Assembly (NCBI GenBank): GCA_977030845.1
Contig: OZ365113.1
Coordinates: 39,556,001-39,620,000, forward strand
Length of the DNA: 64,000 bases
From: Fimbriosthenelais zetlandica
Taxonomy: Eukaryota
Direction of reading: 5' to 3'
The position numbers and the translations under genes were made by a program. This document shows, piece after piece, positions 2,851 through 44,203 of this stretch (position 1 is the stretch's first letter; the number at the start of each line of letters is the position of its first letter). The notes under the pieces were generated by a model. That model saw only the letters and a list, made by a program, of their open reading frames with translations. It was not told the origin of the DNA and searched no databases.

Positions 2851-4607
2851 TTATAAGGAACGATGGCAGAGAGGCGCATTTCCACATCCGCCTTCCTGAT
2901 GCTTTTGAAGCAGAGAGTTTCTAGAGAATGACTTGGAGCACACATGGCAGTTGTACTTCTTAATGTCTGTGTGTGTCTGGAGGTGAGCCCTCAGGTTGGA
3001 CCTGTCAGCAAATGACCTTCCACAGTGACTACACTGGAAGGGCTTTTCTCCTGTGTGCGTGCGCATATGACCCTGGAGGAGCCAGGGCCTGGAGAAGGCC
3101 TTACCACACAGGTGACACTTACAGGGCAGGGTGTGGGTGCGGATGTGCATCTTTAAGGCTCCCTGGCTGACGTATTTCTTGTCACAGTGTTTGCAGCTGT
3201 ATTCTTTCTTGATGAGGGCAGTACAATGGAACTGCTTGTGCTTAGAGAGACCACTGAATGTGGCATAGCTCTTGCTGCAAGCCTCGCATTGATACCTTGG
3301 TGGTTCGCCGTCCCTGCGCTTCCTTGGCGTCTCCATCTGCGAATGCATTTGTCCGTCCATTTCCATGGGTACTGGATAACGATCCTGATTCCATGGGAAG
3401 TTAGGGCTCTGGCGTGGAGTGACAGGAGTTGCAGGATGGGCGTGGGATGATGCTCTTGGATGGTGAACAGGACTCAAACAGATCTCTGATGGAGACCTGT
3501 CACTGACTGGAGACATGACCGGGGACACCGGCAAGCGGGTAGGCACCGGGGAAATGACATGAGGGGAAGTAGGTGAAGCTGGATGGTAAGGGGAAATAGC
3601 ACCGGGTGAAGTAGGAGTCGGAGGGGTTGCCATAGTAATCCCCTGAAGACGGGATTCAACAGCTTTGATGTGAAGGTCCTGAAGCCGCTTAAAGCTGAGG
3701 GCCAGGTAGGGGAGGTGCATCTCGGGGGAGAGACCAGTTGGGGCCCAGTGGTACTGTGCGTGGTGCTTGTGGTGGTGGCCTGGCTCAGGCGAGAGGCTGG
3801 GGGACCTGAGGGGGCTAGAGGAGGCATTGGAGGAGGCTGGTGAGGGGAGAGGAGCAGTGAGGGAGTAGTTGATGGGTTCTGGAGTAACAGAGCCATGGGA
3901 AGATCCCCTGGATGGGCTCCGGCTGTCGGTGTGGCTCCGTGAGGAAGGACTGGTACTGCAAGTACTCGATTCATCGTCACGGGAAGAAGCTTCACAAAGC
4001 TTAGCTGTTAAACAGAAGAAAAGAGAGAACATGAATATCAAGCTATTTGGATGTATTAACACACTATTATAAGGTAGATGTCCTGGTGAGGCAGTCCTGA
4101 TAACCAGCGCCAGGTACTGAGATGCAGACATATAGTGAACTAATGGGATGGTTACGCATGACGGACCACACCCACGCACCCGAAGAGGTGGACAAGAAGT
4201 GGGTTTGTTGGTATACATAGGCCCATCTTCAGCGATGCGGCAAGGCACCAATACAAACTTAATGATAAACTATTTTAACTGTTTAAATTAAAATAGTGTA
4301 TATAAAGCATTTGCTAATGTGTTAAGTGCAATGGTAAACATATGGGATAGCCATCACGGACCATGTCTGGTAAGACTTAATAAATGATAATGTAAAATGA
4401 TAATAAAGATTAAAGTGAGATAAAATGAGATAACTTACCAGGTGAGAATATGACTGGTGGAATGAGTGAGATCCTTGTATTGATGGAAGGATCCTGTATC
4501 TGTTGGGAGACTGGTGAGAGGAGGCCTTCCCGGCACTCCATATCGATAGTTCTAGGCATGCCGAGAACTGAGGCAGCCTTCTTCTTCACTAGAAAGGACC
4601 TTGGCAT
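2851..4607 (-). CDS. snail: Snail-family zinc-finger transcriptional repressor, paralog A; complement(join(2851..4004,4439..4607)), 440 aa
   Basis: Exon 1 starts AAAG-ATG at 4607 and encodes canonical [13 protein letters not shown]. Donor CCTG|GTAAGT (intron from 4438). Acceptor is a pyrimidine tract + TAACAG| ending at 4005. The phase-1 junction gives GCT (Ala), in frame with ORF 2851..4251. 169+1154=1323 nt, TAA stop. Five C-terminal fingers with Snail signatures ([44 protein letters not shown]2HC-type last finger). Confidence 0.95.
2884..3294 (-). other. Five-finger Snail zinc-finger array of paralog A (137 codons)
   Basis: YQCEAC..H..HC through ..KHQEGGC. Colinear without indels with 19894..20304 (offset 17010) and 40786..41196. 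Confidence 0.95.
4005..4438 (-). other. Phase-1 GT-AG intron of paralog A (434 bp)
   Basis: GTAAGT donor and pyrimidine-tract/CAG acceptor; removing it joins SNAG and zinc fingers in frame. Confidence 0.9.
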
Positions 4608-4830
4608 CTTTCTGTGATATCAATCCAGATTTGATTATAAAAAACACACAACAGGTAAAATCCTGATAAACACAAGTAAAATCAGTGTTGTGGTATTCCA
4701 CTGTCAAGTGTTCAGCACCAGATATGTATGAGGTATACAGACTGGTAGAGGTGGTATAAGATTCCAATACACAACAATGTGGGAGAATGCAGTTAAGAGT
4801 TCTGTAAAGGCACGTTGTGATGTTGGGATG

Positions 4831-4999
4831 TGAATGCCATAACACTGGACCCACGCAGCTTTAAATATCCCATCCCATACCTCGACACGCGTCCCAGACA
4901 GGTGCAAAAGAGTGAGTGACAGCGCGTCAACCAATCAGGGCCTGGTAGTGCTATAGCCACGCCCAGTGGAGAGGTGGGGGCTTAGTATCCAACCAATGA
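4831..4999 (-). promoter_or_regulatory. Probable core/proximal promoter of paralog A
   Basis: On the minus strand: TATA-like TATTTAAA (4860..4867) with Inr-like GCATTCA about 32 nt downstream (A at 4835). Also CCAAT boxes at 4931 and 4993, a KLF/Sp-type CCACGCCC near 4957, and E-box CAGGTG at 4899..4904. The TSS is inferred, not observed. Confidence 0.55.
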
Positions 5000-7337
5000 G
5001 AAGAGACGATGCCGATTACTATGGTGACGCTATAGAGGGATGGGGTTCTCAACAGGTGCTGGTGGAGGGGATGCCAAGTGCCAAGGGAGGAGGGGCCTTG
5101 TTTTACCCCCTCCCTTCTGTAGAGGTATGCCACCCTACCAATGTCCAAAGGTATTTCTAGGCAAGTGAAATCCAAGAATTTCTCTGAGGAAAACTTTAAG
5201 AATTACATGATTTTAAATTTCAGCAAGACTGTGTTATATCCTTCCCTAACATAGACTGTTATCTTTCACGCTTGATACTTGATAACGCTAGACAATTTTG
5301 ACTGTGTTTTGGCATTTCCCATACTGGCTTATCTCAAGCCTAAGTAGGCCTATGTTACTCCATAATGAACAAAGTCTTGTCAAAATGTATTCAAGTTTAA
5401 TTGCAATACATATCTACTGTTTTATATGGAATAGATTAAATATATTACAGTCATCGCATCAGAATGGTTTTGTACTAACTATTGGTAACTCGTCCCATCC
5501 CGATTAGCTTTAAAGTCTCATAATCAAGTCAAAGTCACAAAATACTAATTTAATGATGGAATGGATTCCAATTTCCTCTCCTTCAGAAACAAAACATTAG
5601 TTTTGGAACATATCACGCAACAGATGGCTTTGTACAAATATGTGCTTACACTTTGTGACATAGCTGTTAATGTGGAGACAACACCCAACACCCAAATCCA
5701 GGAAGTTGGGACAGCCACCTTTAGTTCGGGTTCTCGCCACTAAGCGCCGCCAGTGTGCCGTTGGTAACTGGTGTCTAGTGGAGACGGTCTCGCACCAACA
5801 CGGTATGTCACGAGCAAGGCAGTGTATATGTGAGAGCTCTCCCAGCAACCTCACCACTTCTAGGAAAGGCAAAGGTCGCCAAAACGCGCCATTCAAAAAA
5901 TGAATTGGTATTGATGGGGAGCAAATAGAAGTCATTCATGATATGAAGAAAATACGAGTGGCCTATAATATATGAGGATAGGTCCCTGTCATTTATAGTC
6001 TCGAGGCCAAGCCGAAGCCAAAAATGAACTGAACTAGGCTTATAGCAATAGCTAGCCTTTAGGAAAGTCAAGTAGCAGTAAATACGGAAACTGCTGTAAC
6101 ACTGGAAAATCATATATAAAGAACATAGGCCTATATACATATGGTCAATGGATTGGGTCTCCAGCATGTCTTGGAATAGGCTATTTATACTATAGACTTT
6201 TTTTGGCGTCAGAACATCCCTACAAGTGGTAAAAGGCAGATCAACAAGCCCAAGTCCCATAACCATCAAATAAAGAAGATATATATCATTCTGAAAAGAT
6301 CAAACATTGTTTATAGATCTCTGGATGCGCTTTTTCCATTGCCAGATCAAAAGGATCTAAAGACATAGTGACCTGCCACCTGTTGTTCCCTTTCTCTTCT
6401 TTTATTCCCACCCTGTCTGTCAGCGCCCACTCAGGAAAGCCTGGGGTTATAACTTTACCACCACAGCCCCCAGGGCCCCTTCTCCCGGAGCCAGTCCGGC
6501 GGACGGCGACACGGCCAGTGGTGGGGATGTGGCCGGGTGGCATGTTCCCGGCAGGGGGCGGTGTCGCGAGGAGGATGTGGGATGTATGGGGTGAAAGTAG
6601 CGTGAAACTAGGCCTATATGGGTAGATAAAATAAAAATTAATAATCAAGTGGATGGGTCAGTTTGCGCAGTAGGCTTGGCCATAGATGTTTCAGTTTCGG
6701 CAATGAAACCAAGAACAGCTGCTTCAGACGTAGGCCTAAACTTAGAATTACAAAACTAAAATCAGGCAGCCAATTTCATATTTCCCTGGATTATATTCAT
6801 TTATTTCCAAATGTAGGCCTATAGCACTATAGGCCTAAGAGATATTCCCACAAGCATCTTTGCATGAAAAGAGGTGTATCTTTTCTCCGCCTCTTGACGG
6901 ACGCTTCCTGTCTGATGACGTATCACGTCAACACAACGTCAACGAGGCCCGTCGTCATGGACGCTCCCCCTGGTTGCGTGGGTCGCCACCAGGGGTCCAA
7001 GTTCACATCAGATGTTCACGCTCGCCGTGGTGCATTATGGGAACAGTTGAAGACATATATATTAAACATAGCCCTGTTGTTACAATGTTCAGACGTTGTG
7101 AACCATGTTAAGTTTCGAGGCTGTAAAACAAAGCATTCAGTCCCGAGTAAACCATAGGCCGACTAGACCTATAAGATCTATAGGGCCTACATGTATTGGA
7201 ATAAAAAATAAATTTATGAGTAGACTAGAGGGTAGGTCTACGGTAACAGGGACTAATCTATTGATGGCCAGAAATATGAAAACAGTGCCACAGGTTAAGT
7301 ACCATTAACATGGAGAATGTCCCTATTTCCTGTGGAA

Positions 7338-7388
7338 TTTGGAGGGGTAAACTTTGGAGGGGTAAACTTTGGAGGGGTAAACTTTGGA
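7338..7388. repeat. 15-bp minisatellite TTTGGAGGGGTAAAC x3.4
   Basis: Three exact copies plus a partial one. Confidence 0.95.
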
Positions 7389-10300
7389 ATGATGTATCAG
7401 AGAGTCTGGTCAAAATAGGCCTATGAACACATGATATGGGGTACAGAAATAAATATAGTCCATATAAAAAAGAGCAACCATGGGACAAAATGTTCAAAGA
7501 CAATGAGCAGGGATGGCGAATGAGGTGAGGGGAAACAATGCGTATAGACCCTAATTAGAAACGAGATCTCTTAAAGGAACAGCGACCTCTTAAAGAAGCG
7601 GGCTGATAGATCAATCAAGAAGAAACATAGCGATGGGAAAGAAGAGGGTAAGGGGAAGGAGGCTAGCTTTACAGGGGAGTAAGTTGATTTTCCGTCTGAA
7701 GAAACAATAGCTAGACTAACGAGCTTCACCTCGGTGCAAGTATAGGGAAAACGTGCATAGTTTGTGAGTCGGGAGGAGGAGACGGGGCCGAGTTTGATGT
7801 TGCCGGCCACCGGGGGTGAGATAGAACGCCTTGTTTGTATTGGCGAGTCGGGGATTGACAGCAGCAGGCTCGGCAGGACGTGGCAGGTACAACGGGTCGG
7901 ATCTTTCCAGGGGCTACACTTGTTCTATGCCACTCTTACACTGTTTTCTTTCTCAGCTAAAATGTTGATTTAGCAGTTAAAAGTGGTAAGGCGATTCGCT
8001 AGTGGTGTGTGATGGATATAGCAAACATCTTCACACAGACTCTTTGTGCCAGGAACGACACGCGGGCGGGACAAACGAAACATCATTTTCAATTCTCCCT
8101 ACCGTCATGTTGATTTTTAAATTCAAATTTGAGCAGATAATTCCCAGACTATGAAAACATGATAAATCATGTATTGCCGAATCCATTGAAGTCAATGTTT
8201 TTTGGACCTATTACACATCGATAAAATTCATAGAGATATAGCTAAGAGATTATAGCCATCATGTTGATAAATAATGCTGATGATGTTTACCGTTCATACA
8301 TTCACTGATACACATTCATGCGCACTTATAATATAGGAGCTGAAGTACATGAATACAAGGTACTATAACACTGATTGCTGACAACACAGAGGCAATAGAT
8401 TCCCTTGTCTTTTTTTCTCTCCTCCACGGCTTACACCTGCCTATCTATATCATGGGTTTACATAGCCAAACTCATGCGACACTTGACGCCTGTGTTTTAC
8501 GACGACCAGCCCGATATCTGACTTGCTAATATTCACAAAAATGAACAATGGCTATCTTCAATGGCATTGGATTGAGAGCTTAATATTATTTCTGTATTTA
8601 AAAAGAATGTATACCCAATTCGTACACTAGTTGAGCATGTCTTCCTTTCTCAATCAATATGAAGACTATTAAACAGAAATCTTAAATAACTTCATTGTAG
8701 GCCTGTGTGGCAAGTCTTGTTAGCAAGCAGGATAACCCTGCCTCCCCAACATCCATCAACCAACTCCCCACGGACACCAAAGTCAAGAAGAAACAAGTGC
8801 CAACAACACAACCAACCGTCTGATTAAATTGAACACCTTTTACATAACAAAAATCCGACTGAGCCACTTGAACAGGTGTAAAATAAATTAACCCACCCGT
8901 CTGATGTATTCTCTTATAAATACTCCTTTTCCAAGATAAATTCCTCAGTATAATAGCTCATGAACAACTATAGAACATAGGGAATATGTTCCCTATTTCC
9001 CCACTATACCTGTTTTAAGGAGTTTACACGCACCTAAAAAAACATAAAAATAAATGGATCAATTTATAATTCAAGACAATAAAAGAGAAAAAGTAAAGCC
9101 AGCGCTAGCACGTGAGTAAAATGTCATGGGTTAGTGGAATAGTAAGTTTAGTGTAGTAGCTTTATTGCTTGAGAAGCTCGCTCTGTCTACACTTTTTTCA
9201 AACCGGAAGGCCAGGTGACTGCGCGCGCATCTGTAGGTTGTTAATATGGTGGGCGCGACCTCTCGCAGGGGCCCGTTTAACCTCTGTAGCCGTGGTGGTG
9301 GTGGAAAACGAGGAAAAGTTAAATATCTAGCTTCGAGTTGCATACACACACCTTTCCTGGTTTACTTGTATACGAGGTGGAGGTTGGGGGGTGAGTTGTC
9401 ATGGAGAGGGAGGTAAAGAACAGCTGGGATCAGCTCCAACTTCCTGCCGCTAGAATCACCAGGGAGGTTGACCTTCGGGACATGAGTGTCCGCAGAGAAT
9501 GGCTCACTGGATCTATGTCGCGGGTCTATGCTACATACATGTGTAGCATACTCTTTTGGAGGTATAACTTCCGGTTGGCATGCACTTCCGAGTTTTTTTT
9601 AAATATTTTTTTCCTCCGCACATGCCTACATCCCAATTCATTATGGGGCAGCTGCAAAATATCAAAGTGTGAAGAGGATGGTTGGCTATGAATGGATGGA
9701 GCAGGACTTTATGGTCCAAACTATTACAGGGTTTTACTTCCAGAAGCTATTGCCCATGCACCGTTAATGCTGCTCTAAATCCAGCGTTAATTAGCAGAAC
9801 ACCAGACCCCATCACCTTTCACCTCTGTCCTGAAATAACCCACATTCCAACAGTGCTAGAAATGATTGGCCTCAAAGATCTGGTCCTAGAATGTCTTGGA
9901 GCAGGTGAGATTATAGGTGTCAAATCTAGCCAATTTCATGGCAATCCACTTGATTGCTTTTAAAATTTCAAATTTATCAGTTTTTAAGTCAATTTGGAAG
10001 TGGCCTATACAAAACCAGTTATCATTGTCAACATTGTCCCATGGTCTTATATAGATTACTCTATCATTAGCCAGCCGATGAAAAATCAGTCAGTGTTCAC
10101 TGGCCTTAAGAAGACCTTGCATGAGGAGGTGGCCATCTGTCGGTGGAGATCGAAGAAGAAACACTGAGATTAGGTCTGGTGGAAGTAAATGGGTTTCTAA
10201 CCCTGCTTTGGACTGGTGCACATGCAGCTTGCCTCTTGCTGTGGCTACTGCCCCTCTTCGCCTGTTACTCGGGGCGCAAATTAAGCTCTGGTTTAGTAAA

Positions 10301-10636
10301 CTTACACTTTGGTATATAGAGTCAGGCGGGCTTGTTTCCGCCAGGAATCTAGCGAATGTTGCATGTAAATTGCACGTGCACATATTGCTGGATGGATGAA
10401 CCAACCATATGAACTCGCAGGCCACGGCTTCGTCTATAGTGCCACATCAGTTAAAATGAATTAAAATGCCCATTCTCATAATATTCACTAAAACGTCTTT
10501 CTTCGGATCTCTCCTTTCAACCACACTAAAAGTGTCAGACTTAGACAATTCACACGTGTTTAAAAATGTCCAAAATGAAAAACTTCCCACCACTTTACAG
10601 ATAGTCTTTTATCTGTGACCCTCCAAAGTTTAGATC

Positions 10637-10650
10637 GCGCCCCCTGGCGC
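10637..10650 (-). promoter_or_regulatory. CTCF-like motif GCGCCAGGGGGCGC
   Basis: Matches the CCAGGGGGCGC core; motif match only. Confidence 0.35.
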
Positions 10651-12452: not shown

Positions 12453-12716
12453 GAGGTTTTTCACGAGACGTCCCAGGCGTCATAATACGACGATCCGCCA
12501 TTTTGGACGTATAGCAATGCACGTCTACGACGTTGTCTACGTTCAAACAAACTGCCTTACAAAGTTAGAAATAATAGTAGACAACCCACTAGAAGTTTCC
12601 AAAGTACATGAATGGTGTTCGGACGTACCCTATGTACCCTATAGACGTGCAGTGCTATACGTCCAAAATGGCGGATCGTCTCATTTTGACGCCTGGGACG
12701 TCTCGTGAAAAACCTC
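12453..12716. mobile_element. MITE / non-autonomous DNA transposon, 264 bp, 75-bp terminal inverted repeats, TATA (or TA) target-site duplication
   Basis: TATA-GAGGTTTTTCACGAGACGTCCCAGGCGTCA... / ...TGACGCCTGGGACGTCTCGTGAAAAACCTC-TATA. The arms match at 71/75 by hand alignment. No coding capacity. Confidence 0.9.
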
Positions 12717-13710: not shown

Positions 13711-13758
13711 ATCTATCCAGATTTACCGCATGGATCTATCCCGATTTACCGCATGGAT
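13711..13758. repeat. 23-bp tandem duplication ATCTATCC(A/C)GATTTACCGCATGG x2
   Basis: Two copies, one mismatch. Confidence 0.9.
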
Positions 13759-14147
13759 TTAGTCCTCAAATGTTTGCTATAAATGGCGGGATGAATCTAG
13801 ATCCTAACCCAAGCAAGGCCCAAATAGATTTTACGACACTCACATTTTGCGACACTCGCTGCAGAGTAGAATGACAGACTTTGTGGCTTCACATTGCCAT
13901 GAAATAAACCGCCTTAATACTTACCCTCAGTTTCATACCCTCAATTTCAATATAATATTAATTCAACGCTTAAATATACAAAAGCTTCTGCTTTCTTCAC
14001 ACATTAAATTTTATGAACACAATTTTGAACCTATTCAAAATTGGAATTGGAAGAGTATACACAAGTCTATTTCTATTTCTCAAATGTGGGAGCAGAATGC
14101 TCATGGTATCAAGGAAGCACGTGCCCCCATGTAATAGTCACAAGCTG

Positions 14148-14161
14148 TGGCCATCTGGTGG
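14148..14161 (-). promoter_or_regulatory. CTCF-like motif CCACCAGATGGCCA between paralogs A and B
   Basis: 13/14 match to CCASYAGRKGGCRS; motif match only, no binding data. Confidence 0.4.
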
Positions 14162-16918: not shown

Positions 16919-17030
16919 CATCCAGCGTGCCCCCAGCCCCCATCCAGCGTGCCCCCAGCCCCCATCCAGCGTGCCCCCAGCCCCCATCCAGCGTGCCCCC
17001 AGCCCCCATCCAGCGTGCCCCCAGCCCCCA
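16919..17030. repeat. 22-bp C-rich minisatellite CATCCAGCGTGCCCCCAGCCCC x5
   Basis: Five exact copies; the minus strand carries ten G5 runs. Confidence 0.95.
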
Positions 17031-19401
17031 CCCACCAAGTTAAAGACGGTTTGTTTTTGAACATTCTATGGCGTGCATGCTTGGTGTTCTCATTTCAAAG
17101 CAGGAAAAACACATGTATGATATGGCCGCTATTTGCTCTGACCCAAAGAGATGGCGAAATATCTCCTCCTTCGCTTGGTAGGCTATGGACCTACAATTGA
17201 GAAACGTGTAAATATGGCGATTAAAACAAATATTATGTTTATTTTCACGATGAAGGTTGTCTGCCACGTTATGATTTCTAAAAGATTAAGATAAAATTTC
17301 TATTATATTTAATACATTCTAATGGCACATCACTATATTCCTACCTTGTTTGATAAGTCAGTGGATATATAGGATTGTCAGGACCAAAAAAAATGATGCT
17401 ACTTCTGAAGGAGCTCCTCTTAACAGCTTATACATTGTCAAGTCAGTATATACATCCATGCATGTCTAGCGTTTATGTAACTTATATCTGACATGTTTAC
17501 ATGTCAACAATCCCTGTGCCAAAAGTGTTTGCTTTCAAAAGGCACACGTGTCGAGTGGGAGTGAGTCAGACAGCATCATGCTAGGATCACCGTGTTTAAG
17601 TGGGGATCATCCCGATGGCTATAGGTACACTGGCCACATAGTCATAATCTTGTTATATATACCACCAACAACAGTATCTATGAAGCATTTAGACCCATTT
17701 ATATTTGGCCAGTGTTTAACATGTGATCAATTATTATGCATTCGACTAAAATGAATCCTAAATATGTTAAGTGCAGTTTTTACAGCTCTGAACACTAGAC
17801 TTCTTTATTTTGATTAAAATAGGAAATATGGTTACTCTGTCATATAGATGTATACTTGTCGGACCATGTGTTCACTGGTTCATGTTCACACATCTCATAC
17901 ATTGTATTTTGACAGGCTATACATACAACCAACGAGCTTCATTCTATACTCGTTGATCCGGCTATCTATAGGTTCTATCAGAGAGACTACACCATAGTAG
18001 TCTCTCTGGTACTATCTTTCTTGGCTATTTTCTTGATCCAAACCAAGTTCAGCCCTTCAATATACATTAGTACACTTTAATGAATACTGCCTACATTTTA
18101 TCTACCCAGAAAATATACTGTTCTTCCACGTCGATGAAAATAGTAATGGTAACTGAATTCAGGGCCTCATATCAGGAGTTTGAAGTTTGATGCTTATGAT
18201 TTTCATTGCTGATTGAAGACATTGTCTCACGCTAGAGTGATCGTACCAATTTTACAATAGCTTTCTTCATGTTATATTTATGTGTACCGCTAAATAAGCA
18301 ACATTAAGGAATACATCAAGAGAAATCTTCTTTTCTTTGAAGAAATTCTGATGTAAATTATGAAGATATTTGTTCAGCTGAGCACTCGGGAGTCTGGTCT
18401 CCAATTATGCGTGAAATTCCCGACCACTGCACTGGAATTCGCTACACAAAGAAAACAAAACAAGAATCTTGTTCCGGGGGTGTCAAATCGTTTAATCTCC
18501 CCAACCATTATGTTCCCCACTAAAGGTATGAATGCAGATTTGGAGAATTGCGAGGCTTAGTGCCAAAAGGGGAGGTTTTAAGGGAAGGCTTGATGGGGGA
18601 CCTTTTTTTGAGGTTGGTTGGAAAGTTCATCAAGGTTTTGGTTTGTCATTGACGAGGAGCTTTGGTACCTGCCCGGGACAGCATGCTTCTTGCACAAGAA
18701 AGTGACTGGTAGCTTTGCACTATTGCAATCAAAGTCCAGATACCGCCATTGCTGCAAGCAGCGAGACCCTTTGCGAGTAAACCAAGCAGAAAACTGCATC
18801 TACCTGCCAGGAATTGCCGATCGATTACTTCTGCGAGTTAAAATCACTTTCAAGCTCTCACGCCATGAACAATGTTACCGCTACACCTGCTCCCGATTGA
18901 AACATCTCTCACCAGGTAAGCTAAGTATGATTGAGTCTTATCATTTATCTAGCTAGAGAGCTCTTTATAGTCAGAGGTCTTACGGTAAAAATACTATGCT
19001 TCTTTTTCCCCGGGTATCTACACCTACATAAGTAAACACCCAACAAGTGGTTTGCACCTCTTGGGTATAGAAATACCTCAGGTGAGGAGCGGATTGGGGC
19101 GGGCTATAATAGGTGTGAAAAGGGCCCTTGTATCGCATCGAGGTCATTATGGTATTAAATGTATTGTGGTGAAGAATATGGTTCTTTTTATACCAAGGCA
19201 GATAAAGCACATCAAATATGGTTATCCCTTACGGAAGAATAGCCTAGCATAAATTGGTTGGAAGACATTATCTCGAGAGAGGATTAGGATGGAGGTATAA
19301 TTGCCATATCAGCATACATAAAATAGCTTTACTTTTCATGCATGTGTAGGAAGGACACTTAAAAAACGTTTTTTTATAATTCAAAACTCATAGCAGAAAG
19401 G

Positions 19402-19875: not shown

Positions 19876-21982
19876 TTAAACCGATACACCCGGACAACCC
19901 CCATCCTGGTGTTTAAGTAGTAACGACATCCGAGAAAATGTTTTTGAACAGTTTCTGCAGTTGTACTTCTTAATGTCTGTGTGTGTCTGGAGGTGGGCCC
20001 TCAGGTTGGACCTGTCAGCAAATGACCTTCCACAGTGACTACACTGGAAGGGCTTTTCACCTGTATGTGTTCTCACGTGACCCTGGAGGAGCCAGGGCCT
20101 GGAGAAGGCCTTACCACACAGGTGACACTTACAGGGCAGGGTGTGGGTGCGGATGTGCATCTTCAAAGCTCCCAAACTCACGTAATTCTTCTCACAGAAT
20201 TTACAACTGAACTGTTTCTTTATTTGGGAGACACAATGAAACTGTTTGTGTTTGGAAAGTCCACTGAATGTGGCATAACTCTTGTTGCATGCCTCGCATT
20301 GGTATCTGGGTGGGTTCATCGTCCTTCTCGGAGGCTGTTCTTGGCTGAAGTCGATGCCTAGGAAAGTCACTGGTGCACGACTGCGATCTTCACCCCCAGT
20401 CTGTCCTGAATTGTTGCTCCAAGGTCTGCATAGGGATTTCTCCTCTCCCGACTTCACTTCCTTCTTCATTTGTGTGTTTTTCTCCCCATTGACTCCAAGC
20501 TGACCAAAGCCATTCATACCTTTACATTTTTGTGAAGGATCCACATTTGACATCAGTTTACTGATGCTAAACATACCTCCACTTTGGGTATTTGAACCAA
20601 TGTTTGGGCTAAACAGTGCCTTTGGGTTGCCTTGGGTCTTTTGGTTCATCAGGACAACATTTGAATGAGTCTGTTCCGCTGGAGAGGCATTTCTCCATAG
20701 AGCTGATTTGGTCGGGATTCCATTTATAGAGGCATGGGGAGAAGAAAACAAGGTTGATCTTCCACCATGGAAAATATCCACCATTGCAGGATGGGCAGGA
20801 ATAGGTCTAAACACCTGTGGTTTGTGGGGAATAACAGGTCCCCATTTTCCAATGGAATGAGGAGCTTTAATTGGACTTGTCCCAGCTCCTAAAGGACAAC
20901 ACCGACCACCGTGACTGTGGTAGCCATTAAGTTCCTCACCCACTCCGCTGTATGTCGTAGATAACATTGGGTTACTACACAGAGAATCCATTAGCAGTGG
21001 GCTTTGTTGCTGCTGTTGGAAATTAAAACCAAACCTTAATGCATCTTTGGGTATTTCTCCAAACCCAGATGACCTTTTCACGTCACTGATTGTTGGCTGA
21101 ATCCCTAAGAGTGTGGGTTCTCTTCCATTAAAACTTCTCATGCCCGTTGTTCCCCAGGACACGCTGGAGACTGGTTGATCCGTACTGGTCGGCCCTGGAG
21201 GGACACACGGCCTCGGTAAACCGAGAGCGCCGGGAGGAGGGGCCTTGGGATCCGGGAAAGCTGCTTGTGGTGGTGGTGGTGGTGGTGAAGGCGGGGAGGG
21301 AGGAGAAGCGATGGTAGCACCGGTACTACCAACAGGTGTGGCAGGTCTCTGGGGGATACTGGTACCCCGAGCAGGCAGATGTAGGTTACTGGGTTTATTC
21401 TGTGGCCCTTCTTCCTTCTCCTCCTTCATTTGTTGTCCTTGAGCTGAAACAAAAAATGCAATAAATGTATCTTACAAATCCAAGTGGATCACTAAGCTCT
21501 TTTACCTTTTGTTATGGAAGAAAAAATCGCTACTTTAATCATGTTGATTTTCTGGCCTAAAATTATTTGCACAAGCAGGCCTGACAAAACCTCCTCCATT
21601 ATAAGAGACCAATTAAGGTCTTTTTTTAACTTAACTTAGGTGTGCATGTACCCATTTCTAATTCGTGAAAATAATTAATTTTAAGACTGTCATTGAAATC
21701 TAAGATATTTTTTCAACAAATTTAAATAAAGAACTTACTTTGGGTTATACACTGATGGCTCAGTTCCTTCATGATGGCAACATTTCTAGCATTTTCACAC
21801 TCAAGGGTAATCAACGTGGGGACCGAGATTTCTTTTATTCCACTGTCTCCTCCTCCTCTGCCAGTATTTTGTTCTTCTCCAGGCTGCGACCCAACACTTT
21901 CCCCTGATGGTGTCACTGCTCCACCCCCGGAGATGCTGTTACTGCACTTCACCTTGTTCTTGATCAAAAAAGCTCGCGGCAT
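19876..21982 (-). CDS. snail: Snail-family zinc-finger transcriptional repressor, paralog B; complement(join(19876..21443,21739..21982)), 603 aa
   Basis: ATG at 21982 encodes SNAG-like MPRAFLIKN. Donor CAAA|GTAAGT (intron from 21738). Acceptor TTTTTTGTTTCAG| ending at 21444. The phase-1 junction gives ACT, then QGQQMKEE, in frame with ORF 19876..21429. 244+1568=1812 nt. Five Snail-type fingers at 19894..20304. Confidence 0.95.
19894..20304 (-). other. Five-finger Snail zinc-finger array of paralog B
   Basis: [24 protein letters not shown] ... [15 protein letters not shown]. Confidence 0.95.
21444..21738 (-). other. Phase-1 GT-AG intron of paralog B (295 bp)
   Basis: GTAAGT donor, T-rich/CAG acceptor, in-frame junction. 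Confidence 0.9.
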
Positions 21983-37358: not shown

Positions 37359-37379
37359 GGGGGGGGGGGGGGGGGGGGG
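37359..37379 (+). repeat. Poly-G tract (21 G) in a G-rich block
   Basis: Direct count; homopolymer length may be uncertain in the assembly. Confidence 0.85.
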
Positions 37380-37936
37380 ATGGGTGTGGGTATTGGCACG
37401 CGTCAGGTGGTCACAGATCATTAGTATGAACTTGGCACGGTCCTGTTGATTATCAGGTGCTTATTAGCCTGGAAATCTACCCTCCTTATCTACCTTATCT
37501 ACCTTGTCTTCCAGGTATAAGAGGTGATTATATTCCCCGCCCTTACTGCCCACCTCTCACGAACGTCCGGGCTCGGGTCGGTACAAGTCTCCAGATAGGC
37601 CGGCCTACTTAATTGATTTGAAATATATTGAGCACTTTACGCAGATATGCGGGTGTTCAAAAAGTCTTTCATTCAGACTCATTGATTTTCCGTCTTTCAC
37701 GATATGAAATGTAGAAGAATGTAGGCTTTCTTTAGTTGTACGCTCCAATAATTATATATACCCCCATGTGACAGGGAATCATTCTGCAATTTAGGCCAAA
37801 TATCATGGAAAATTGGCCTACATATGATAATAAACAGGGCCAAATGGGAAGTCCGGGATTCTTTTTTTTTTGTTCACAAGGCGAATAGGCCCAACTTGAT
37901 TTAAAAGGAATTTTAAAAGACGTCTGGCTACATGTA

Positions 37937-38016
37937 CAGTCTGTTCACTCTAAGTTGATCCGAAACCACAGTAAATGCATGGTGGTTTCGGTAACTTAGA
38001 GTGAACAGCTAGACTG
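37937..38016. mobile_element. 80-bp Tc1/mariner-type mini-element (TA-CAGT...ACTG-TA)
   Basis: Left arm CAGTCTGTTCACTCTAAGTTGATCCGAAACCAC pairs with right arm GTGGTTTCGGTAACTTAGAGTGAACAGCTAGACTG, with two small indels. Flanked by TA at 37935-36 and 38017-18. Confidence 0.7.
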
Positions 38017-40005
38017 TATAAACTTCAATGCCTACACATATTGTCCCATTTATATACTACATGGGAAAGTCTCTTTGAATTTCAATATGCATCTGGCACG
38101 TCGTTACGTTGCTACCGTTGACGACGTGTATCCAGGATGCGTCCAGTGATTGTTTTTCACGCCGTCACGGCCCGGCGTCAGGCGTATCGCTAATCCCCAA
38201 ATTCCGCTCCAATTTTCCCCGCGAAAATGTTGTCCCAAGTTATAGAAAACGAAGGCAATCCAATGTCCCATTGAAGGCAGGGGGTAAAAGTTTTGAACTG
38301 GGCAGAAAGCTTGGTTAGAATGACAAGATAACAAGATGTAGGCCTTTAAGAATTACGCACGGCATTGATTCAGAAATGAAAATCCAATCCACTTGGAAGA
38401 TCGTGATTGAGGCTATTTTTTTTCATTTTCTAAGCCCTCACTTTTCAACATTTAGGTTGAAATGTTGAATAAGTTTATTCAGGGTAATTTAGTGTATATT
38501 TGATTGTTGATAAAAGCACAGATTTATTTCGTCCCTATATATAGGCCTATATATTGAACAGACGCAGTAAGTATTTAACTCTATTTTATTTAGGCCTAGA
38601 TATATATATAGGCCTATATTTGTATCCCTTGAATTAAATGGACTTTTTAAGACATGAGTTAGACATGAGTTCCAGGTGCCGGTGAACTTGTCACCAACAA
38701 GTGTTTTATCAGCCTCTCGTTGGCAGAAGGCGGGTATCAGCATTTGGTGCCTTATGGCACTTCCCCTTCCATAATGCCGAGAAATGACGTCCCTAGAACA
38801 ATATGGCTCAGCAGAAGGAATTCTGACATCGCTGACACGTCATCAACATCGTCGCGCGCACACACAAGCGAGTGTCATCCTTCTTCCCGGCAGGTGAGGA
38901 ACGAGATGCCATGAAATGCCATAGAAATCCGAGAAGTGCCCAGCCTGACGGCAGGTCATCGGCACGCGAGCTCCCGTTGTCTCGCGAGAATCCAAGCGAG
39001 ACCTCCGGTCATCAAAGTACATCATCTGGCGTTGGTCTCGTGCCGCTCTACTGCGCAGGCGCGGCCGCACGTGCCACAATACTTCCGTTCAGGTCTGCTG
39101 CGCGCGCAGTTTGAAAAAGGGGCCTGGGAGAGGACACAATAGAAAGCCCCCATCGGGGACAGGGGGGCAACTGGCTAACAAGAAGTGGGCGCTATATATA
39201 CATATAGGGGTATTAGAAAGTGGGGTGCGAGGCACATGCATTGCTTGTATCGAAGGGTGAGAGAAAAGGGGGTGATACTTAGTGGAGGGCTTCGCACGAC
39301 AAGGGGGATGGTAAAGACATATACACACCAGCTGGTTATTCACCCAGCTGGATTCTAGTCAACCCAAAGCATAATAAAAGTCCCGTTGTCTGCCCCTATG
39401 GGGTGTCAACCCACCCCGTTATCATGGATTGTCTCCATATCAATCAGTGATAAAGTTCCCACACCCCGTCACCCACCAAAAGGTCACAGTCCCATAATGG
39501 TTGTATATAAGTCTTTCTAAAAGCCTTCTATTGTTCGTATTGTGTGGCGGTCATTAAGACAATGCCTATGACATCCACATGTTTCCCTTATACCTCTATA
39601 AGTAAATTAAAAGCGCGTGACACGATGGCTCGAGGGGCCAGATGATAAACTGAAGGGAGGTGTCATCATTCTGATACTGCCTTAAACCAATACCCCTCCC
39701 CATCCCCATCCCCGGCAGCATCACCCCCTACCCAGCATCAGCAGCAGCATCTCTCCCATCTCCCCATAATAATTGTTCCACACAAAAATGTCAACTGAGA
39801 CAAAGCAACCTTATAGTGGAAGGTTGTCAGGTGTTATGAGCTATTGCCAGGTGTAGCTCCTGCTTGACACGCGCCACTCTCCCGTTTTGTATCCTATGGC
39901 TTATCTCTCCACTCAATGAAGCTTACTGACTAACCTCTGGCATTGTCATATATATGGCCATTAACCCCAGAGTTAGGGGTTAATCTCTTGGTTAAAGGGT
40001 ATATA

Positions 40006-40718
40006 TTTATTTAGGAATACGGGAATACCAAGATGGGAATGCAGAAGTACAGGAGAACAGGCCTTGAAGGCATGCCCTTTGTATGGACCTGAATTATTCA
40101 ATTGGCATCGATTAGAGTAAAATGGTTTGGGTAGATGAAGTAAGATCGGGCAGTTAATATCAACAATGGTTCCCATTAAAGTAATAAGGCGCGGAAATTC
40201 TTTCTCAGAGAAAAGTACTTTTATTCTCCTGTTATATAAATATTATTTTATAACTACACCATTTGGAGGATGTAAAGAACTAATGAGATCCTTAACAATG
40301 ATAACTTACAACTTTTATCAAAGAATATATAACTGTATGCATGTAATGTGCAAAACAGCCAAACCGATCTAAAATGTAGCACGTGTGAGCATAAAACAAT
40401 CATAGCTTTGTTTTATATTTAATCAAAGGTACATTTAGTGTTTTCTCAGTGTGTATTATCATATAATTAGTGTACATATGACCAAACATATAAAACGATT
40501 GCTTCCTATAGAGCAGGAAAAAACAACTTTTCACGTCAACAGAGAACATTGCCTGGCTTACCCAACCATAACAATCATAAATATATGTGTGAAAACATAT
40601 CAAACACAACTTTGTAACTTGTTCCTGTTAGGTATTGTATAGTTTTTGTTAATGATATGTGTGATGTGTTGTGGAAGGTTTGCGTCATTCCTTTAATAAT
40701 GTTTGTTTGCAGTTTATT
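40006..40718 (-). terminator. Candidate polyadenylation signals of paralog C (AATAAA at 40713..40718, 40220..40225, 40006..40011)
   Basis: Three AATAAA hexamers on the minus strand downstream of the stop; which is used is unknown. Confidence 0.3.
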
Positions 40719-40770
40719 TGTTGGAAATGGTACACAATTTAAGTGTTCTTTGGCACGTTAATCACGTGGA

Positions 40771-43700
40771 TTACATGCTGTTAACGCATCCACCATCTTC
40801 ATGTTTCAAAAGCAATGAATTCCGTGAGAATGACTTTGAACAGTTTCTGCAGTTGTACTTCTTAATGTCTGTGTGTGTCTGGAGGTGGGCCCTCAGGTTG
40901 GACCTGTCAGCAAATGACCTTCCACAGTGACTACACTGGAAGGGCTTTTCACCTGTATGTGTTCTCACATGACCCTGGAGGAGCCAGGGCCTGGAGAAGG
41001 CCTTACCACACAGGTGACACTTACAGGGCAGGGTGTGGGTGCGGATGTGCATCTTCAAAGCTCCCAAACTCACATAGGTTTTGGGACAGTACTTACAGCT
41101 GAACTCTTTCTTAATAGTAGCTGTGCAATGAAACTGCTTGTGCTTAGACAGACCGCCATGAGTTGCATAACTCTTTTTGCATGCATCACATTGATATCGT
41201 GGTGGGTCATTTTCCCTGCTCTTCTTAGTAACCACTGCTCTGAAATCTGCCATATCCAGTGGGACATTCTCAATGCCCCAGGGGATCTTCGGCTTGATGC
41301 GCTCTCCATCTGTATCATCATCTTTCCATGATTTACTACCATTGCTGTCTTTGATGGCAGCCATATTGATGTGCGAGTTATGGCCGACATAGCCAGGGGC
41401 TACTGCATGGTACCTGCTCTCATATTGTCCTTTCTGGTAATCAGAGACCCGTGGTTCACTGATTTTCTGGGCGAGGGGAGCATTGGTGGAGGGAGACAGA
41501 CGCTCTGTGAGGAAGGATGGGATGGGTGGTGGAGGTTGGGGAGGAGATGGAGGAGACAGTCTTTGGTATCCTGGAGAAGAAGCTGGATCCAAGTCAGGAG
41601 ATGTCATTGCCAGGAAGGCTTCTGACCCGACAGAGGACGAGCTTCTGTGTGGTGTGTGTGGGAACCCCGGGGCCATTCTTGAGGCGTCCATGTATTGTTC
41701 TTTGGGAGAAACCTGTCGGTTTTGATCAAAAGGATAGGGGATAGACCGAGAAGGCTCCCGGGGCAATGAAGCTTCCTGAGGCAGAGCGGATTCTTGTTTT
41801 ATATCACGTATTTTGTAATGACCTGCAGGGGAAAACCTGCTTCGGTCCTGATGTGGAGGTAAATCAGGCGAGAGACTGAGCATGTTGTGATATGAAGGAG
41901 GGCTAGGGAAAGGCCTGTAGGATCTCTCTCCATAGAACCTTTCCTCATATGTCCCACTAGTGCCATAAACGTCTTCAAAATGAAGAGGTTCCATTTCCCT
42001 GTGTGGGGCCCATATTCTGGATCTGCCATACTGGGCATGGGTAGTCGAGTAGGGAGGAAGTCCATGAGGGGAACGCGTTTGTGGTATCGGCCTGGATGTT
42101 GTAGGTGACCTTGGCCTCAGTGGTGATCTTGACCTCAGCGGAGACCTTGACCTCAATGGTGACCTTGTGAGAGATGGCCTTGACATTAGAGGTGATCTTG
42201 ACCTTGGTGGGGATGAATGCCTTATTGGTGACCGTGAAGGGAAACTTGGTTGAATGCCTTGTGAAGGGAAACTTGGTTGAATGCCTTGTGAAGGGAAACT
42301 TGGTTGAATGCCTTGTGAAGGGAAACTTGGTTGAATGCCTTGTGCTGGGGGCGGGGATGGATAGTGAACCACCTCCCCGGGTGTTTTCTCAATGGTGATC
42401 TTAGTTCCATTCCTGGTAGATGTTATGTAACCAATAGCTTTCAGACCACTGGAGGCAGGTACTGCAGGTGACCGGTAACAGGCCATTTTCTCTGGCTCCA
42501 GGGCAGCGTCCGGAGATGTTTTTCCCATGCCTTGGATGCTGAAGGCTGCAGGTACAAGCCCCTGAGGGGGCGTTAACTTCAGGTTCACGCTGTCGTTCCC
42601 ATACCTTCCTTCTCTGCTTTCCTCTGATCTTCCACCTGAAAATCACAAGAACAAAACCATCAGGTGAGTCAGTACAAAGGACGGGACACTTGTAACAAGG
42701 CTTGGCAGGTGATGCCGTCAAAGACAAGGCCTCTTGGATGGAGGCTATGCTTCCAGCCATTAGCATTATTAGCGCCTCGAGACCTTTCTCAAATTTGTGA
42801 ATTTTCTTCAGGCACTTATTCAAGGAATTTCGGCATCGGATTCATTGTTGTTTCTTTTGATGATCTAATTTGCATTTATTTTTGCCAATGGGTACTACAA
42901 GTTTCTCTTGATAGTAAAAGATTTTAAGATGCTTGAAGGACTCTGGTTTTATATGAATAATTAATGGGAAATAATGTGATTTGATGAAATGGTCAAATGC
43001 ACTTAAAGTTGACCTACGTAGGCCTGCCTACTAAAAGAGTTGAACCTTTTCCATTTTAGTTTGGCTCATAACTACTTAAAACCCAGATATTATCAAATCA
43101 GTGTATTTTATGAGTGATCTATGGAGAGTTTCCAAGTCTACTTGGTTCAGACCAACTACACTAGGTGGCAGGATGTGTCCGCGGAAGGCTAGCCCTCCAC
43201 CTGAATGTAAATGAGTGAGGGATACTCGGGTAGTCGGTGAGGAAGGGACTGGGAGCCAGGTCTCTGCAATGTTATGTTCTAAATACCACCCCCCCCCCCC
43301 CTCCTATCAAACCCCATCCCCTCACTCCACCACCCTCCCCCATCACCTGACGGGGTAGGGTAGGAAATGGTCACACTTGAGCAATTTTATCCCCTGCTTA
43401 AACCTGGCGTCAGTCAAGAGGAACCAGACAATGGGGCCTGGAAATAGTAATGACCGGTCACTGAAAGGGCCAGGAATAAACCAGGAACAGTGGTTTTGTT
43501 ACACCGGGGGAACCCTATAAGCCCCTTTACTGATCTTTGTAATACAAAAATTATGGCATAAATAATAAATAAAATAAAAAATGAAATTATTTTTTCCTAT
43601 ACAGGAGAGAAAGTTATCATATAGATTGAAGCTGGCTCTATAATGACATTACACATGTAGTCTCAGGGATCTCCGCCCCCCCCCCCAACCAGTAGGCCTA

Positions 43701-44203
43701 CAAATGTCTTTTTTCAGTGACTGTTGTTGACTGTGTATTTGAATTTGAATCACTTTCATTACTTTGAAAAATCTTGTTTAAAAGACATTATTATGTTTTG
43801 GCGAATATGATCATCAAGATTTGAAAAGTATGATTATGGAGTATAATGCATTATGGATTTAAAATCAATGGTATAAGGGAATAAGCTCACCTTGAATTTC
43901 TCGGGGATCCCTGTTCTCTACGTCCCATGACTGGTTATAGTCTGTCCAGGTTTTCGCTGCCACATCTGTCTCATCATATCCATGTATGGAGGGCCCTGAC
44001 TTCATACATAATGGTGAATCAATCCTAGATTCTTCCTTAACTTCTTCACGTGGAGGCGATGCTGGGGGTGGGGTGGATGGTTCTATAAGAATCACTTTGT
44101 TTGGCACCTGATTTTCAGTAATCACTCCTGTATTCTGTCCTGGAGGTGAGCCCCCAAAGCCACGCTTTGGTCCACGCTTCTTAACAAGGAAGGCGCGTGG
44201 CAT
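40771..44203 (-). CDS. snail: Snail-family zinc-finger transcriptional repressor, paralog C; complement(join(40771..42635,43891..44203)), 725 aa
   Basis: CAAG-ATG at 44203 encodes [13 protein letters not shown]. Donor CAAG|GTGAGC (intron from 43890). Acceptor TTGTTCTTGTGATTTTCAG| ending at 42636. The phase-1 junction gives GGT, then [19 protein letters not shown], open and in frame with ORF 40771..42588. 313+1865=2178 nt. Five Snail-type fingers at 40786..41196. Confidence 0.94.
40786..41196 (-). other. Five-finger Snail zinc-finger array of paralog C
   Basis: [24 protein letters not shown] ... [15 protein letters not shown]; offset 20892 from the paralog B array. Confidence 0.95.
42234..42344 (-). 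repeat. Coding 27-bp minisatellite x4 in paralog C, encoding (QGIQPSFPS)4
   Basis: Four exact GTGAAGGGAAACTTGGTTGAATGCCTT units, frame-preserving. Confidence 0.95.
42636..43890 (-). other. Phase-1 GT-AG intron of paralog C (1255 bp)
   Basis: GTGAGC donor, TTTTCAG acceptor, in-frame junction. Confidence 0.88.

What the first reader, a model, noticed from the sequence alone, without database searches (positions are those of the whole stretch)
2851..44203. Three-gene head-to-tail Snail cluster with shared two-exon, phase-1 architecture
Seen: three intact Snail genes on the same strand, with 3' ends 17.0 and 20.9 kb apart. Each has one phase-1 intron (at codons 57, 82 and 105) separating the SNAG exon from the finger exon, and no other gene lies between them. 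Protein length rises along the array (440, 603, 725 aa). Known: snail, escargot and worniu are linked in Drosophila, and many invertebrates have one or two snail genes. Inference: this is a local tandem triplication old enough to erase N-terminal similarity, possibly independent of the fly cluster. The long gene-free spacers suggest a shared regulatory landscape.
Basis: partly seen in the sequence, partly recalled or inferred. Interest (0 to 1): 0.75.

Follow-up and report, generated by a model that had tools for sequence, protein, structure and literature searches.

The report
Four-gene Snail cluster with converted fingers
A probable annelid genome carries four (not three) head-to-tail genes for the developmental regulator Snail. 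The duplication is old and separate from the fly's, but a 200-base stretch encoding the DNA-reading fingers has been copied between the four genes and is now almost identical. This is a tidy but not unprecedented case.

Summary
Three intact Snail-family genes lie on the minus strand, with stops at 2851, 19876 and 40771 and ATGs at 4607, 21982 and 44203. Each has a SNAG exon, one GT-AG phase-1 intron (codons 57, 82, 105) and a five-finger exon, giving 440, 603 and 725 aa.

The cluster is larger than the window. A fourth same-strand Snail gene (D, 620 aa, same architecture) lies 46 kb upstream of C, 26 kb past the window end. These four are the only Snail-type genes found in the 447-Mb genome.

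All four have 1:1 orthologs in a second species, with A, B and C on one 581-kb contig. So the duplications are old. Dipteran escargot/worniu sequences form a separate clade, so the duplications are independent of the fly cluster.

The two-exon phase-1 structure also occurs in relatives' Snail genes, so it is inherited.

About 200 bp encoding finger 2 (end) to finger 4 shows 1-2 synonymous differences in 66 codons among B, C and D. The flanks show about 50%, and so does the same core between species. GC3 is raised in the core. This indicates recent GC-biased gene conversion, probably from D.

No RNA runs were listed, so splicing and expression are unconfirmed. Linked snail paralogs are already known in Capitella, Lottia and Drosophila. 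I class this as a new member of a known kind, of moderate interest.

The parts
4439..4607 (-). Gene A exon 1: ATG at 4607, SNAG (MPRSFLVKK), 56 codons plus 1 base, donor TG|GTAAGT
2851..4004 (-). Gene A exon 2 (coding part, stop at 2851-2853): Ser/Pro-rich region, YLALSF motif, five C2H2 fingers; protein 440 aa
   Evidence: similarity to ortholog P0001 starts at the exon edge
21739..21982 (-). Gene B exon 1: ATG at 21982, SNAG (MPRAFLIKN), 81 codons plus 1 base, donor AA|GTAAGT
19876..21443 (-). Gene B exon 2 (coding, stop at 19876-19878): five fingers; 603 aa, or 601 aa if the second tandem acceptor at 21437 is used
43891..44203 (-). Gene C exon 1: ATG at 44203, SNAG (MPRAFLVKK), 104 codons plus 1 base, donor AG|GTGAGC
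40771..42635 (-). Gene C exon 2 (coding, stop at 40771-40773): five fingers; 725 aa; contains a perfect 27-bp x 4.1 repeat at 42234-42344
2972..3171 (-). Conversion core in A (end of finger 2 to finger 4). A is converted in patches: identical to the other paralogs at 3153-3068, 3048-2987 and 2985-2947, with an unconverted 19-bp island at 3067-3049
19982..20181 (-). Conversion core in B: 1 synonymous difference in 66 codons against C and against D
40874..41073 (-). Conversion core in C. The matching tract in D is at window-relative 90211-90410, outside the window
44204..64000 (.). First 19.8 kb of the 45.9-kb spacer between gene C and the fourth Snail gene, D. D lies OUTSIDE the window on the same (minus) strand at window-relative 90102-94530 (G000:C19:39646102-39650530). 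In D the ATG is at 94530, exon 1 runs to 94002 (176 codons plus 1 base, donor AG|GTACGT), exon 2 starts at 91435 and the stop is at 90102-90104; the protein is 620 aa.
   Evidence: D's donor and phase-1 acceptor are conserved in the ortholog locus L027; spacer ORFs have no Pfam match

Best explanation
This is a four-gene, same-strand tandem cluster of Snail-family transcription-factor genes. It spans about 92 kb near the end of a 40.7-Mb chromosome of a probable annelid, and the window holds three of the four genes (A, B, C).

Each protein begins with a SNAG repressor peptide, which by homology is expected to recruit co-repressors. Each ends in five C2H2 fingers of Snail type, which by homology are expected to read E-box-like sites. 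The middle parts are long, low-complexity and unrelated between paralogs.

The gene structure is a SNAG exon, one phase-1 intron and one large exon. It is inherited from the ancestral Snail gene of this clade.

The duplications predate the split from at least one other sequenced species, which has one ortholog of each of A, B, C and D. They are independent of the dipteran snail/escargot/worniu cluster.

On top of this old divergence, a roughly 200-bp segment encoding the end of finger 2 through finger 4 has recently been homogenised among all four genes by GC-biased gene conversion. Conversion is complete in B, C and D and patchy in A. D was most probably the source. The four paralogs therefore keep an identical DNA-reading core while everything else diverges.

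Shown here: gene positions, reading frames, splice-site consensus, orthology, the conversion signature and the separate fly clade. Inferred: splicing in vivo, expression, repressor function, E-box binding and the direction of conversion.
For: Genes and structure:
- Pfam finds zf-C2H2 in all exon-2 products.
- The finger block matches human SNAI1 (3W5K) over 130 residues as a single stretch, E 1e-56.

Fourth gene and family size:
- Only four finger hits are at least 82% identical to A's block, and all lie at C19:39.56-39.65 Mb on the minus strand.
- The next hits, at 54-57%, are Scratch-type.

Inherited intron:
- The D ortholog in L027 has the same donor (GTGAAG|GTACGTTT) and a phase-1 acceptor. 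Protein similarity starts at both exon edges.
- Phase-1 donors after the SNAG exon are also the best-scoring solution in L024 and L026.

Orthology:
- Pre-finger similarity links A to P0001 (E 8e-25), C to P0008 (8e-19), and D to P0009 and P0015 (2e-24).
- B aligns with P0021 from 60 residues before the fingers through the C-terminal tail.
- P0001, P0008 and P0021 share one contig tag and one sample. P0015 is from the same sample.
- Trees recover {B, sp2_B, P0045} at 99/94, {A, C, sp2_A, sp2_C} at 97/92 and {D, sp2_D, sp3_D} at 98/96. The dipteran clade (100/99) sits outside a spiralian group at 88/88.

Conversion:
- Synonymous codon differences in the core are B-C 1/66, B-D 1/66, C-D 2/66 and A against the others 9-11/64. 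In the flanks they are 26-32 of 52-60. Fisher p is 4e-10 to 4e-12 for the B, C and D pairs.
- The same core compared between species differs at 31-39 of 60-65 codons, so the nucleotide sequence itself is not conserved.
- GC3 is 0.65-0.70 in the core against 0.42-0.58 in the flanks. Relatives' cores have 0.30-0.52.

Direction of conversion:
- D orthologs in two species carry CHLC and GHV.
- The A, B and C orthologs carry CQLC/CQMC and GHI/GHL.
- Here A, B and C carry the D-type H, and B and C the D-type V.
- All four share a lineage-specific Ser in CSHC.
Against: - No RNA run was listed, so the junctions, the transcription starts and expression of each copy are unconfirmed.
- Acceptor sites for A and B are not unique by consensus score alone.
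- The order and orientation of the orthologs in the second species could not be read, because no DNA was served.
- The direction of conversion rests on two or three residues.
- The age of the split between D and A/B/C is unresolved, because the trees show a polytomy.
'Annelid' rests on best named hits and on other agents' unchecked notes.
Confidence: 0.85

Rival explanations
1. One reading: the cluster is a complete three-gene local triplication, and its shared intron phase and rising protein length reflect that triplication.
For: Three genes with the same architecture lie in the window. A, B and C form one clade apart from D, so A/B/C may indeed be a sub-triplication.
Against: A fourth same-strand Snail gene lies 46 kb upstream of C. 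The phase-1 two-exon structure also occurs in D and in other species' Snail genes. D is 620 aa, which breaks the length trend.
Confidence: 0.08
2. The near-identity of the 200-bp core is due to selection on the nucleotide sequence itself (an RNA structure, a microRNA site or an exonic enhancer), not to gene conversion.
For: Fingers 3 and 4 are the most conserved protein part of the whole superfamily (Kerner 2009). Strong constraint is therefore expected there.
Against: The same codons are saturated at synonymous sites between species, including between D and its own ortholog at 39/65. Three paralogs in another assembly differ at 23-36 of 65-66 core codons. Lineage-specific residues (H, V, S) are shared by all paralogs of this genome only. 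GC3 is raised only here.
Confidence: 0.03
3. The genes are recent duplicates whose non-finger parts diverged very fast, so the identical core is simply what remains of a young duplication.
For: The middle regions are low-complexity and evolve quickly. One of them carries a perfect 27-bp repeat expansion.
Against: Each paralog has its own ortholog in a second species. Synonymous sites in finger 1 and finger 5 are saturated between paralogs, with NG86 dS undefined. There is no intergenic or intronic DNA similarity between the copies.
Confidence: 0.02
4. One or more of the four copies is an unexpressed or decaying gene, so the functional cluster is smaller than four.
For: There is no expression data. 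B has lost the YLALSF motif that its ortholog keeps. A carries several private substitutions in fingers 2 and 5.
Against: All four have intact ORFs of 440-725 aa, all zinc ligands and an N-terminal SNAG. Their orthologs are intact. Flank dN is 0.13-0.19 with saturated dS.
Confidence: 0.1

Closest known systems
Capitella snail1/snail2 and Lottia snail1/snail2 linked pairs (Kerner et al. 2009, PMC2688512)
   Same: These are spiralian Snail-family paralogs lying next to each other, interpreted as small-scale tandem duplications. They have a SNAG domain plus five fingers. Capitella Snail1 falls in the same spiralian group in the tree.
   Different: Those are pairs; the Capitella genes are 6 kb apart and divergently oriented. 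Here there are four genes, all on one strand, 17-49 kb apart, each with an ortholog in another species. No gene conversion is mentioned in that paper.
Drosophila escargot / worniu / snail cluster on 2L
   Same: It consists of three linked Snail-family genes within about 144 kb, with divergent N-terminal parts and similar fingers. Function there is partly redundant, as established in the fly literature (for positions).
   Different: The origin is independent. Dipteran sequences form their own clade, and other insects have one snail gene. Orientation in the fly is mixed.
Human SNAI1 (structure 3W5K)
   Same: The finger block aligns over 130 residues in one stretch, E 1e-56. The SNAG N-terminus is of the same type.
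   Different: Per Kerner 2009, the first finger has been lost in human SNAIL1. The proteins here are two to three times longer, with unrelated middle regions.
Concerted evolution of tandem paralogs by tract-limited, GC-biased gene conversion (a general phenomenon, cited from my own knowledge)
   Same: A short tract is identical between otherwise saturated paralogs. The tract sits in the most conserved segment, and GC3 is raised.
   Different: I found no report of this for Snail-family genes in the searchable library. Here it spans four genes over 90 kb and covers only the DNA-reading core.

Membership tests
Snail family (sensu Kerner 2009: snail, as distinct from scratchA and scratchB) | N-terminal SNAG-1 peptide (MPRSFLVKK-like) directly after the initiator Met | tested here: met
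   MPRSFLVKK (A), MPRAFLIKN (B, D) and MPRAFLVKK (C) at the first ATG of each exon 1
Snail family (sensu Kerner 2009: snail, as distinct from scratchA and scratchB) | Five C-terminal C2H2 fingers, with Snail-type first and last fingers | tested here: met
   There are five C-x2-C...H-x3-5-H/C units per gene and Pfam zf-C2H2 matches. The block gives a single-stretch match to SNAI1 3W5K. In the tree they group with Capitella Snail1, Lottia Snail2 and Crepidula Snail2.
Snail family (sensu Kerner 2009: snail, as distinct from scratchA and scratchB) | Not Scratch: the fingers differ from the ScratchA and ScratchB signatures | tested here: met
   The genome's Scratch-type loci (L005, L006, L007) are only 54-57% identical to A's finger block. 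They match Capitella scratch 1 and 2 signatures instead. Presence or absence of the SCRATCH domain itself was not searched.
Snail family (sensu Kerner 2009: snail, as distinct from scratchA and scratchB) | CtBP-binding motif (P-x-D-L-S type; present only in some Snail proteins) | tested here: inconclusive
   D has PLDLD about 18 residues before finger 1. C has PLDMA, A has PMEMD and B has GIDFS at the same place. Binding is not testable here.
Snail family (sensu Kerner 2009: snail, as distinct from scratchA and scratchB) | Sequence-specific E-box binding and transcriptional repression | not testable with these tools
   Inferred from homology only.
Orthologs of the Drosophila snail/escargot/worniu cluster | Paralogs pair one-to-one with fly paralogs, meaning the duplication predates the protostome ancestor | tested here: not met
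   Dipteran escargot/worniu-labelled sequences form one clade (100/99) outside the spiralian group that holds A-D. Apis, Tribolium, Anopheles and Daphnia have one snail gene each (Kerner 2009 Table 1).
Gene-conversion tract between paralogs | Synonymous divergence is locally near zero within the genome, but normal in the flanks and in the same segment between species | tested here: met
   Core 1-2/66 against flanks 28-31 of 55-60 for the B, C and D pairs. Between species the core differs at 31-39 of 60-65.
Gene-conversion tract between paralogs | Lineage-specific substitutions are shared by all paralogs of one genome | tested here: met
   CHLC, GHV (GHM in A) and CSHC occur in the paralogs here. 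The second species has CQLC/CQMC, GHI/GHL and CAHC in its A, B and C orthologs.

The most novel reading that the evidence does not exclude
Paralog D acts as a master copy. Its DNA-reading core is repeatedly written into three old, otherwise unrecognisably diverged paralogs by GC-biased conversion across up to 90 kb. All four regulators are thereby held to one DNA-binding specificity while their effector and regulatory parts evolve freely. If such tract-limited concerted evolution is common in spiralian Snail clusters, some of the 'independent, recent' snail duplications inferred from finger-dominated trees would be older than thought.
Probability: 0.3. Interest if true: 0.6.

Novelty: new member of a known kind. 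Interest (0 to 1): 0.42.

Why it matters
Snail genes control mesoderm formation, neurogenesis and epithelial-mesenchymal transitions. Their repeated duplication is a textbook case for studying how paralogs are retained.

This locus offers a clean natural experiment. Four paralogs have one-to-one orthologs in a sister species, unrelated middle regions, and a DNA-binding core kept identical by conversion.

It lets one ask whether subfunctionalisation acts only through expression and cofactor-binding parts. It also warns that nucleotide-level comparisons of the fingers would badly underestimate the age of such duplications.

The practical correction is that any study of this cluster must include the fourth gene outside the window.

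Tried and rejected
- RNA support: the look-up of sequencing runs was busy three times. It then listed no run for gene C (kind any) or gene B (kind rna). Read laying was therefore never used, and the junctions remain predictions.
Gene order, orientation and conversion in that species could not be examined.
- Conserved non-coding elements: blastn of the sp3 D locus (L027, 10 kb either side of the gene) against 164 kb around the cluster matched only coding pieces. The test has low power because synonymous sites are saturated.
- Paralog self-comparison: no similarity outside the finger region. This rules out a young segmental duplication.
- Search with the pre-finger part of D: it returned only two orthologs. 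The middle regions evolve too fast to date the duplications more deeply.
- Other genes in the spacers: Pfam on ten spacer ORFs, Rfam and tRNA scans were all empty.
- Idea that conversion distorts protein trees here: rejected. The core is almost invariant at protein level, and both the whole-finger tree and the flank-only tree group the genes by orthology, not by species.
- Naming the organism: not possible with these tools. Origins for the related assemblies are blank.
- First attempt at a solved-structure search failed on frame. It was repeated correctly.
D is now described under the spacer part and in the text.
Full report
**Observation**

The ORF listing and a six-frame motif scan find three long minus-strand ORFs ending in five C2H2 fingers, with stops at 2851, 19876 and 40771. 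They also find exactly three MPR[SA]FL starts in the window, all on the minus strand, at 4607, 21982 and 44203. Each lies 0.3-1.6 kb upstream of one finger ORF. The 3' ends are 17,025 and 20,895 bp apart.

A frame-constrained GT-AG search gives a single strong donor in each SNAG ORF:
- TG|GTAAGT after codon 57 position 1
- AA|GTAAGT after codon 82 position 1
- AG|GTGAGC after codon 105 position 1

The first pyrimidine-rich acceptor after the finger ORF opens places exon 2 at 4004, 21443 and 42635. Consensus scores alone do not single out the acceptors of A and B, but orthologs help:
- Similarity of A to P0001 begins at the predicted first residues of exon 2.
- Similarity of C to P0008 begins 21 residues into exon 2.
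- B has two in-frame acceptors 6 nt apart.

No RNA run was listed for this genome (after three busy answers). The junctions therefore remain predictions.

**The cluster is larger than the window**

I searched the whole 447-Mb assembly with A's finger block. Only four hits are at least 82% identical, and all lie on the minus strand of contig C19 between 39.558 and 39.647 Mb. The window is C19:39,556,001-39,620,000.

The fourth gene, D, lies at window-relative 90102-94530. I fetched the flanks and modelled it:
- ATG at 94530 with MPRAFLIKN
- donor AG|GTACGT after codon 177 position 1
- acceptor at 91435
- five fingers, 620 aa

So the architecture is the same, the array spans about 92 kb, and the 'rising length' trend stops.

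The next-best genomic hits (54-57% identity) are Scratch-type fingers. They match Capitella scratch 1 (ScratchA) and scratch 2 (ScratchB) printed in Kerner 2009, Additional file 1.

**Family**

All exon-2 products hit zf-C2H2 in Pfam. A's finger block matches human SNAI1 (3W5K) in a single 130-residue stretch, E 1e-56. In trees the four proteins sit with Capitella Snail1, Lottia Snail2 and Crepidula Snail2. With the SNAG start, these meet the defining features of the Snail family as set out by Kerner 2009.

**Is the two-exon phase-1 structure special?**

No. The D ortholog in another species (L027, ENA ERZ25767047) has the same donor sequence and a phase-1 acceptor. Protein similarity begins exactly at both exon edges, and the intron is 7.1 kb instead of 2.6 kb. 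D-like genes in two further assemblies (L024, L026) also have a SNAG exon 1.4-1.7 kb upstream, with a phase-1 donor as the best solution. The structure is inherited from the ancestral gene of this clade.

**Age and orthology**

Paralogs share DNA similarity only over about 440 bp of fingers. Pre-finger BLAST links each gene to its own ortholog:
- A to P0001, E 8e-25
- C to P0008, E 8e-19
- D to P0009 and P0015, E 2e-24

B aligns with P0021 from 60 residues before finger 1 through the tail, with paralog-specific residues in fingers 1 and 5.

P0001, P0008 and P0021 lie on one 581,644-bp contig of ENA ERZ26222911. P0015 is on a 316,481-bp contig of the same sample. All four genes therefore existed before these species split.

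Trees gave the following:

| Group | Support |
|---|---|
| {B, sp2_B, P0045} | 99/94 |
| {A, C, sp2_A, sp2_C} | 97/92 |
| The two groups above together | 93/94 |
| {D, sp2_D, sp3_D} | 98/96 |

The relation of D to A/B/C among other spiralian sequences is an unresolved polytomy. Dipteran escargot/worniu-labelled sequences form a 100/99 clade outside the spiralian group. Kerner 2009 lists one snail gene each in Apis, Tribolium, Anopheles and Daphnia. Independence from the fly cluster is therefore supported.

**Gene conversion**

I aligned the 140-codon finger blocks without gaps. A segment from nt 132 to about 331 is nearly identical in all four genes, while fingers 1 and 5 differ at most synonymous sites. 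Counts of synonymous codon differences:

| Comparison | Core | Flanks |
|---|---|---|
| B-C | 1/66 | 28/60 |
| B-D | 1/66 | 31/58 |
| C-D | 2/66 | 29/55 |
| A against the others | 9-11/64 | 26-32 of 52-60 |

Fisher p is 4e-10 to 4e-12 for the B, C and D pairs. NG86 dS is 0.02-0.05 in the core and not computable (saturated) in the flanks.

The same core compared between species differs at 31-39 of 60-65 identical-residue codons. This includes D against its own ortholog at 39/65. Three paralogs on a contig of GCA_013332975.1 differ at 23-36 of 65-66 core codons. The nucleotide sequence is therefore not conserved as such; it has been homogenised in this lineage.

GC3 is 0.65-0.70 in the core against 0.42-0.58 in the flanks. 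Relatives' cores have 0.30-0.52. That is the expected mark of GC-biased conversion.

A is converted in patches: 3153-3068, 3048-2987 and 2985-2947, with a 19-bp unconverted island at 3067-3049.

**Direction of conversion**

Residues hint at the direction:
- D orthologs in two species have CHLC and GHV.
- A, B and C orthologs have CQLC/CQMC and GHI/GHL.
- The wider family has CPLC and GHI.
- Here A, B and C carry the D-type His, and B and C the D-type Val.
- A's Met lies in the unconverted island, one step from the Leu of its ortholog.
- All four share a private Ser (CSHC).

D is thus the most likely source, with moderate confidence.

At protein level the core is almost invariant in the family. 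Conversion therefore does not distort the protein trees here, and I dropped the idea that it explains the species-wise grouping reported by Kerner 2009.

**Surroundings**

Spacer checks found the following:
- None of ten spacer ORFs of at least 120 aa hits Pfam.
- There is no Rfam family or tRNA.
- The nearest recognisable coding pieces are an HSP20-domain ORF at window-relative -22,865..-22,089 and a sub-threshold FERM_C ORF at 120,387-121,034.

The four genes thus sit in a gene-poor interval of about 140 kb. Whether it is one regulatory domain is untested. No non-coding block is shared with the sp3 D locus, but that test has little power.

**Comparison with what is known**

Kerner 2009 already reported genomic linkage of snail paralogs in Capitella, Lottia and Drosophila. 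The Capitella genes are 6 kb apart and divergent. The Drosophila cluster spans 144 kb with mixed orientation.

This locus is a larger, uniformly oriented example with demonstrable orthologs and a conversion tract. Two full-text searches found no paper linking gene conversion or concerted evolution with snail genes. Other searches found no description of a four-gene annelid snail cluster.

**Verdict**

The gene count is incomplete, and the architectural argument is not diagnostic. I class it as a new member of a known kind, with a neat conversion signature as the added value.

Noticed in passing
G000:C19:1558244-1558672 (+), 1668313-1668732 (-), 20383890-20384324 (-); loci L005, L006, L007: The whole Snail superfamily found in this genome sits on one chromosome: four Snail genes at 39.56-39.65 Mb, two ScratchB-type genes 110 kb apart at 1.56 and 1.67 Mb, and one ScratchA-type gene at 20.4 Mb. 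This fits the old snail-scratch linkage proposed from Trichoplax and amphioxus by Kerner 2009.
   Followed up: partly
L005:1498 (+) versus L006:1923 (-): The two ScratchB-type paralogs are 75% identical in DNA over finger 1, 88% over the core and 97% over the finger-5 part (2 synonymous differences in 22 codons). This may be a second case of 3'-biased conversion.
   Followed up: no
window 42234-42344 (-), inside gene C exon 2: A perfect 27-bp x 4.1 tandem repeat encodes QGIQPSFPS four times, followed by an RSP-rich stretch. It is a very recent in-frame expansion in a coding region.
   Followed up: no
window 3650-3720 (gene A) and window-relative 90963-91061 (gene D): A motif [FY]LA[LM]SFxxLQ is shared by A, D, the B ortholog P0021 and 21 of 109 Snail hits, all from unnamed assemblies. 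It was absent from the 14 named Snail proteins checked (Owenia, Capitella Snail1, molluscs, flies and others). Apart from the fingers and the exon-1 end, it is the only piece that DNA search links between species. Its function is unknown.
   Followed up: partly
window 21437-21443 (-): Gene B has tandem acceptors 6 nt apart (TTTCAG|CTCAAG|G). Both are in frame, giving 603 or 601 aa.
   Followed up: no
window 20551-20571 (-): The eh1-like FSISKLM peptide noted earlier in B (s1-228885) is present there, but I did not see it in the B ortholog P0021 (by eye, no formal search). Its significance is therefore doubtful.
   Followed up: partly
window-relative 114884-119653 (locus L018): A roughly 4.7-kb tandem array with copies 91-94% identical is open in several frames on the minus strand. 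Its Pfam hits are low-complexity noise. It lies about 20 kb upstream of gene D.
   Followed up: no
window-relative -22865..-22089 (L020:7135-7911, minus strand): An ORF with an HSP20/alpha-crystallin domain (E 1e-15) is the nearest recognisable non-Snail coding sequence on the 3' side of the cluster.
   Followed up: no
L023 and L024 (GCA_013332975.1, contig JAAUXT010109034.1, 52,580 bp): Another assembly appears to carry four Snail genes on one 52.6-kb contig in mixed orientation. Three finger blocks were read in the fetched loci. The fourth, P0025, is assigned only because it shares the listed contig length. The adjacent pair, 8.6 kb apart, shows only mild core homogenisation (23/65 against 40/65 synonymous differences, p 0.005). 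Dense Snail clusters therefore seem common in this group, and conversion strength varies.
   Followed up: partly
window 16919-17034 and 46893-46999: Two near-perfect or perfect short tandem repeats (22 bp x 5.3 and 25 bp x 4.3) lie in the spacers. Each sits inside a chance ORF with no Pfam match.
   Followed up: no
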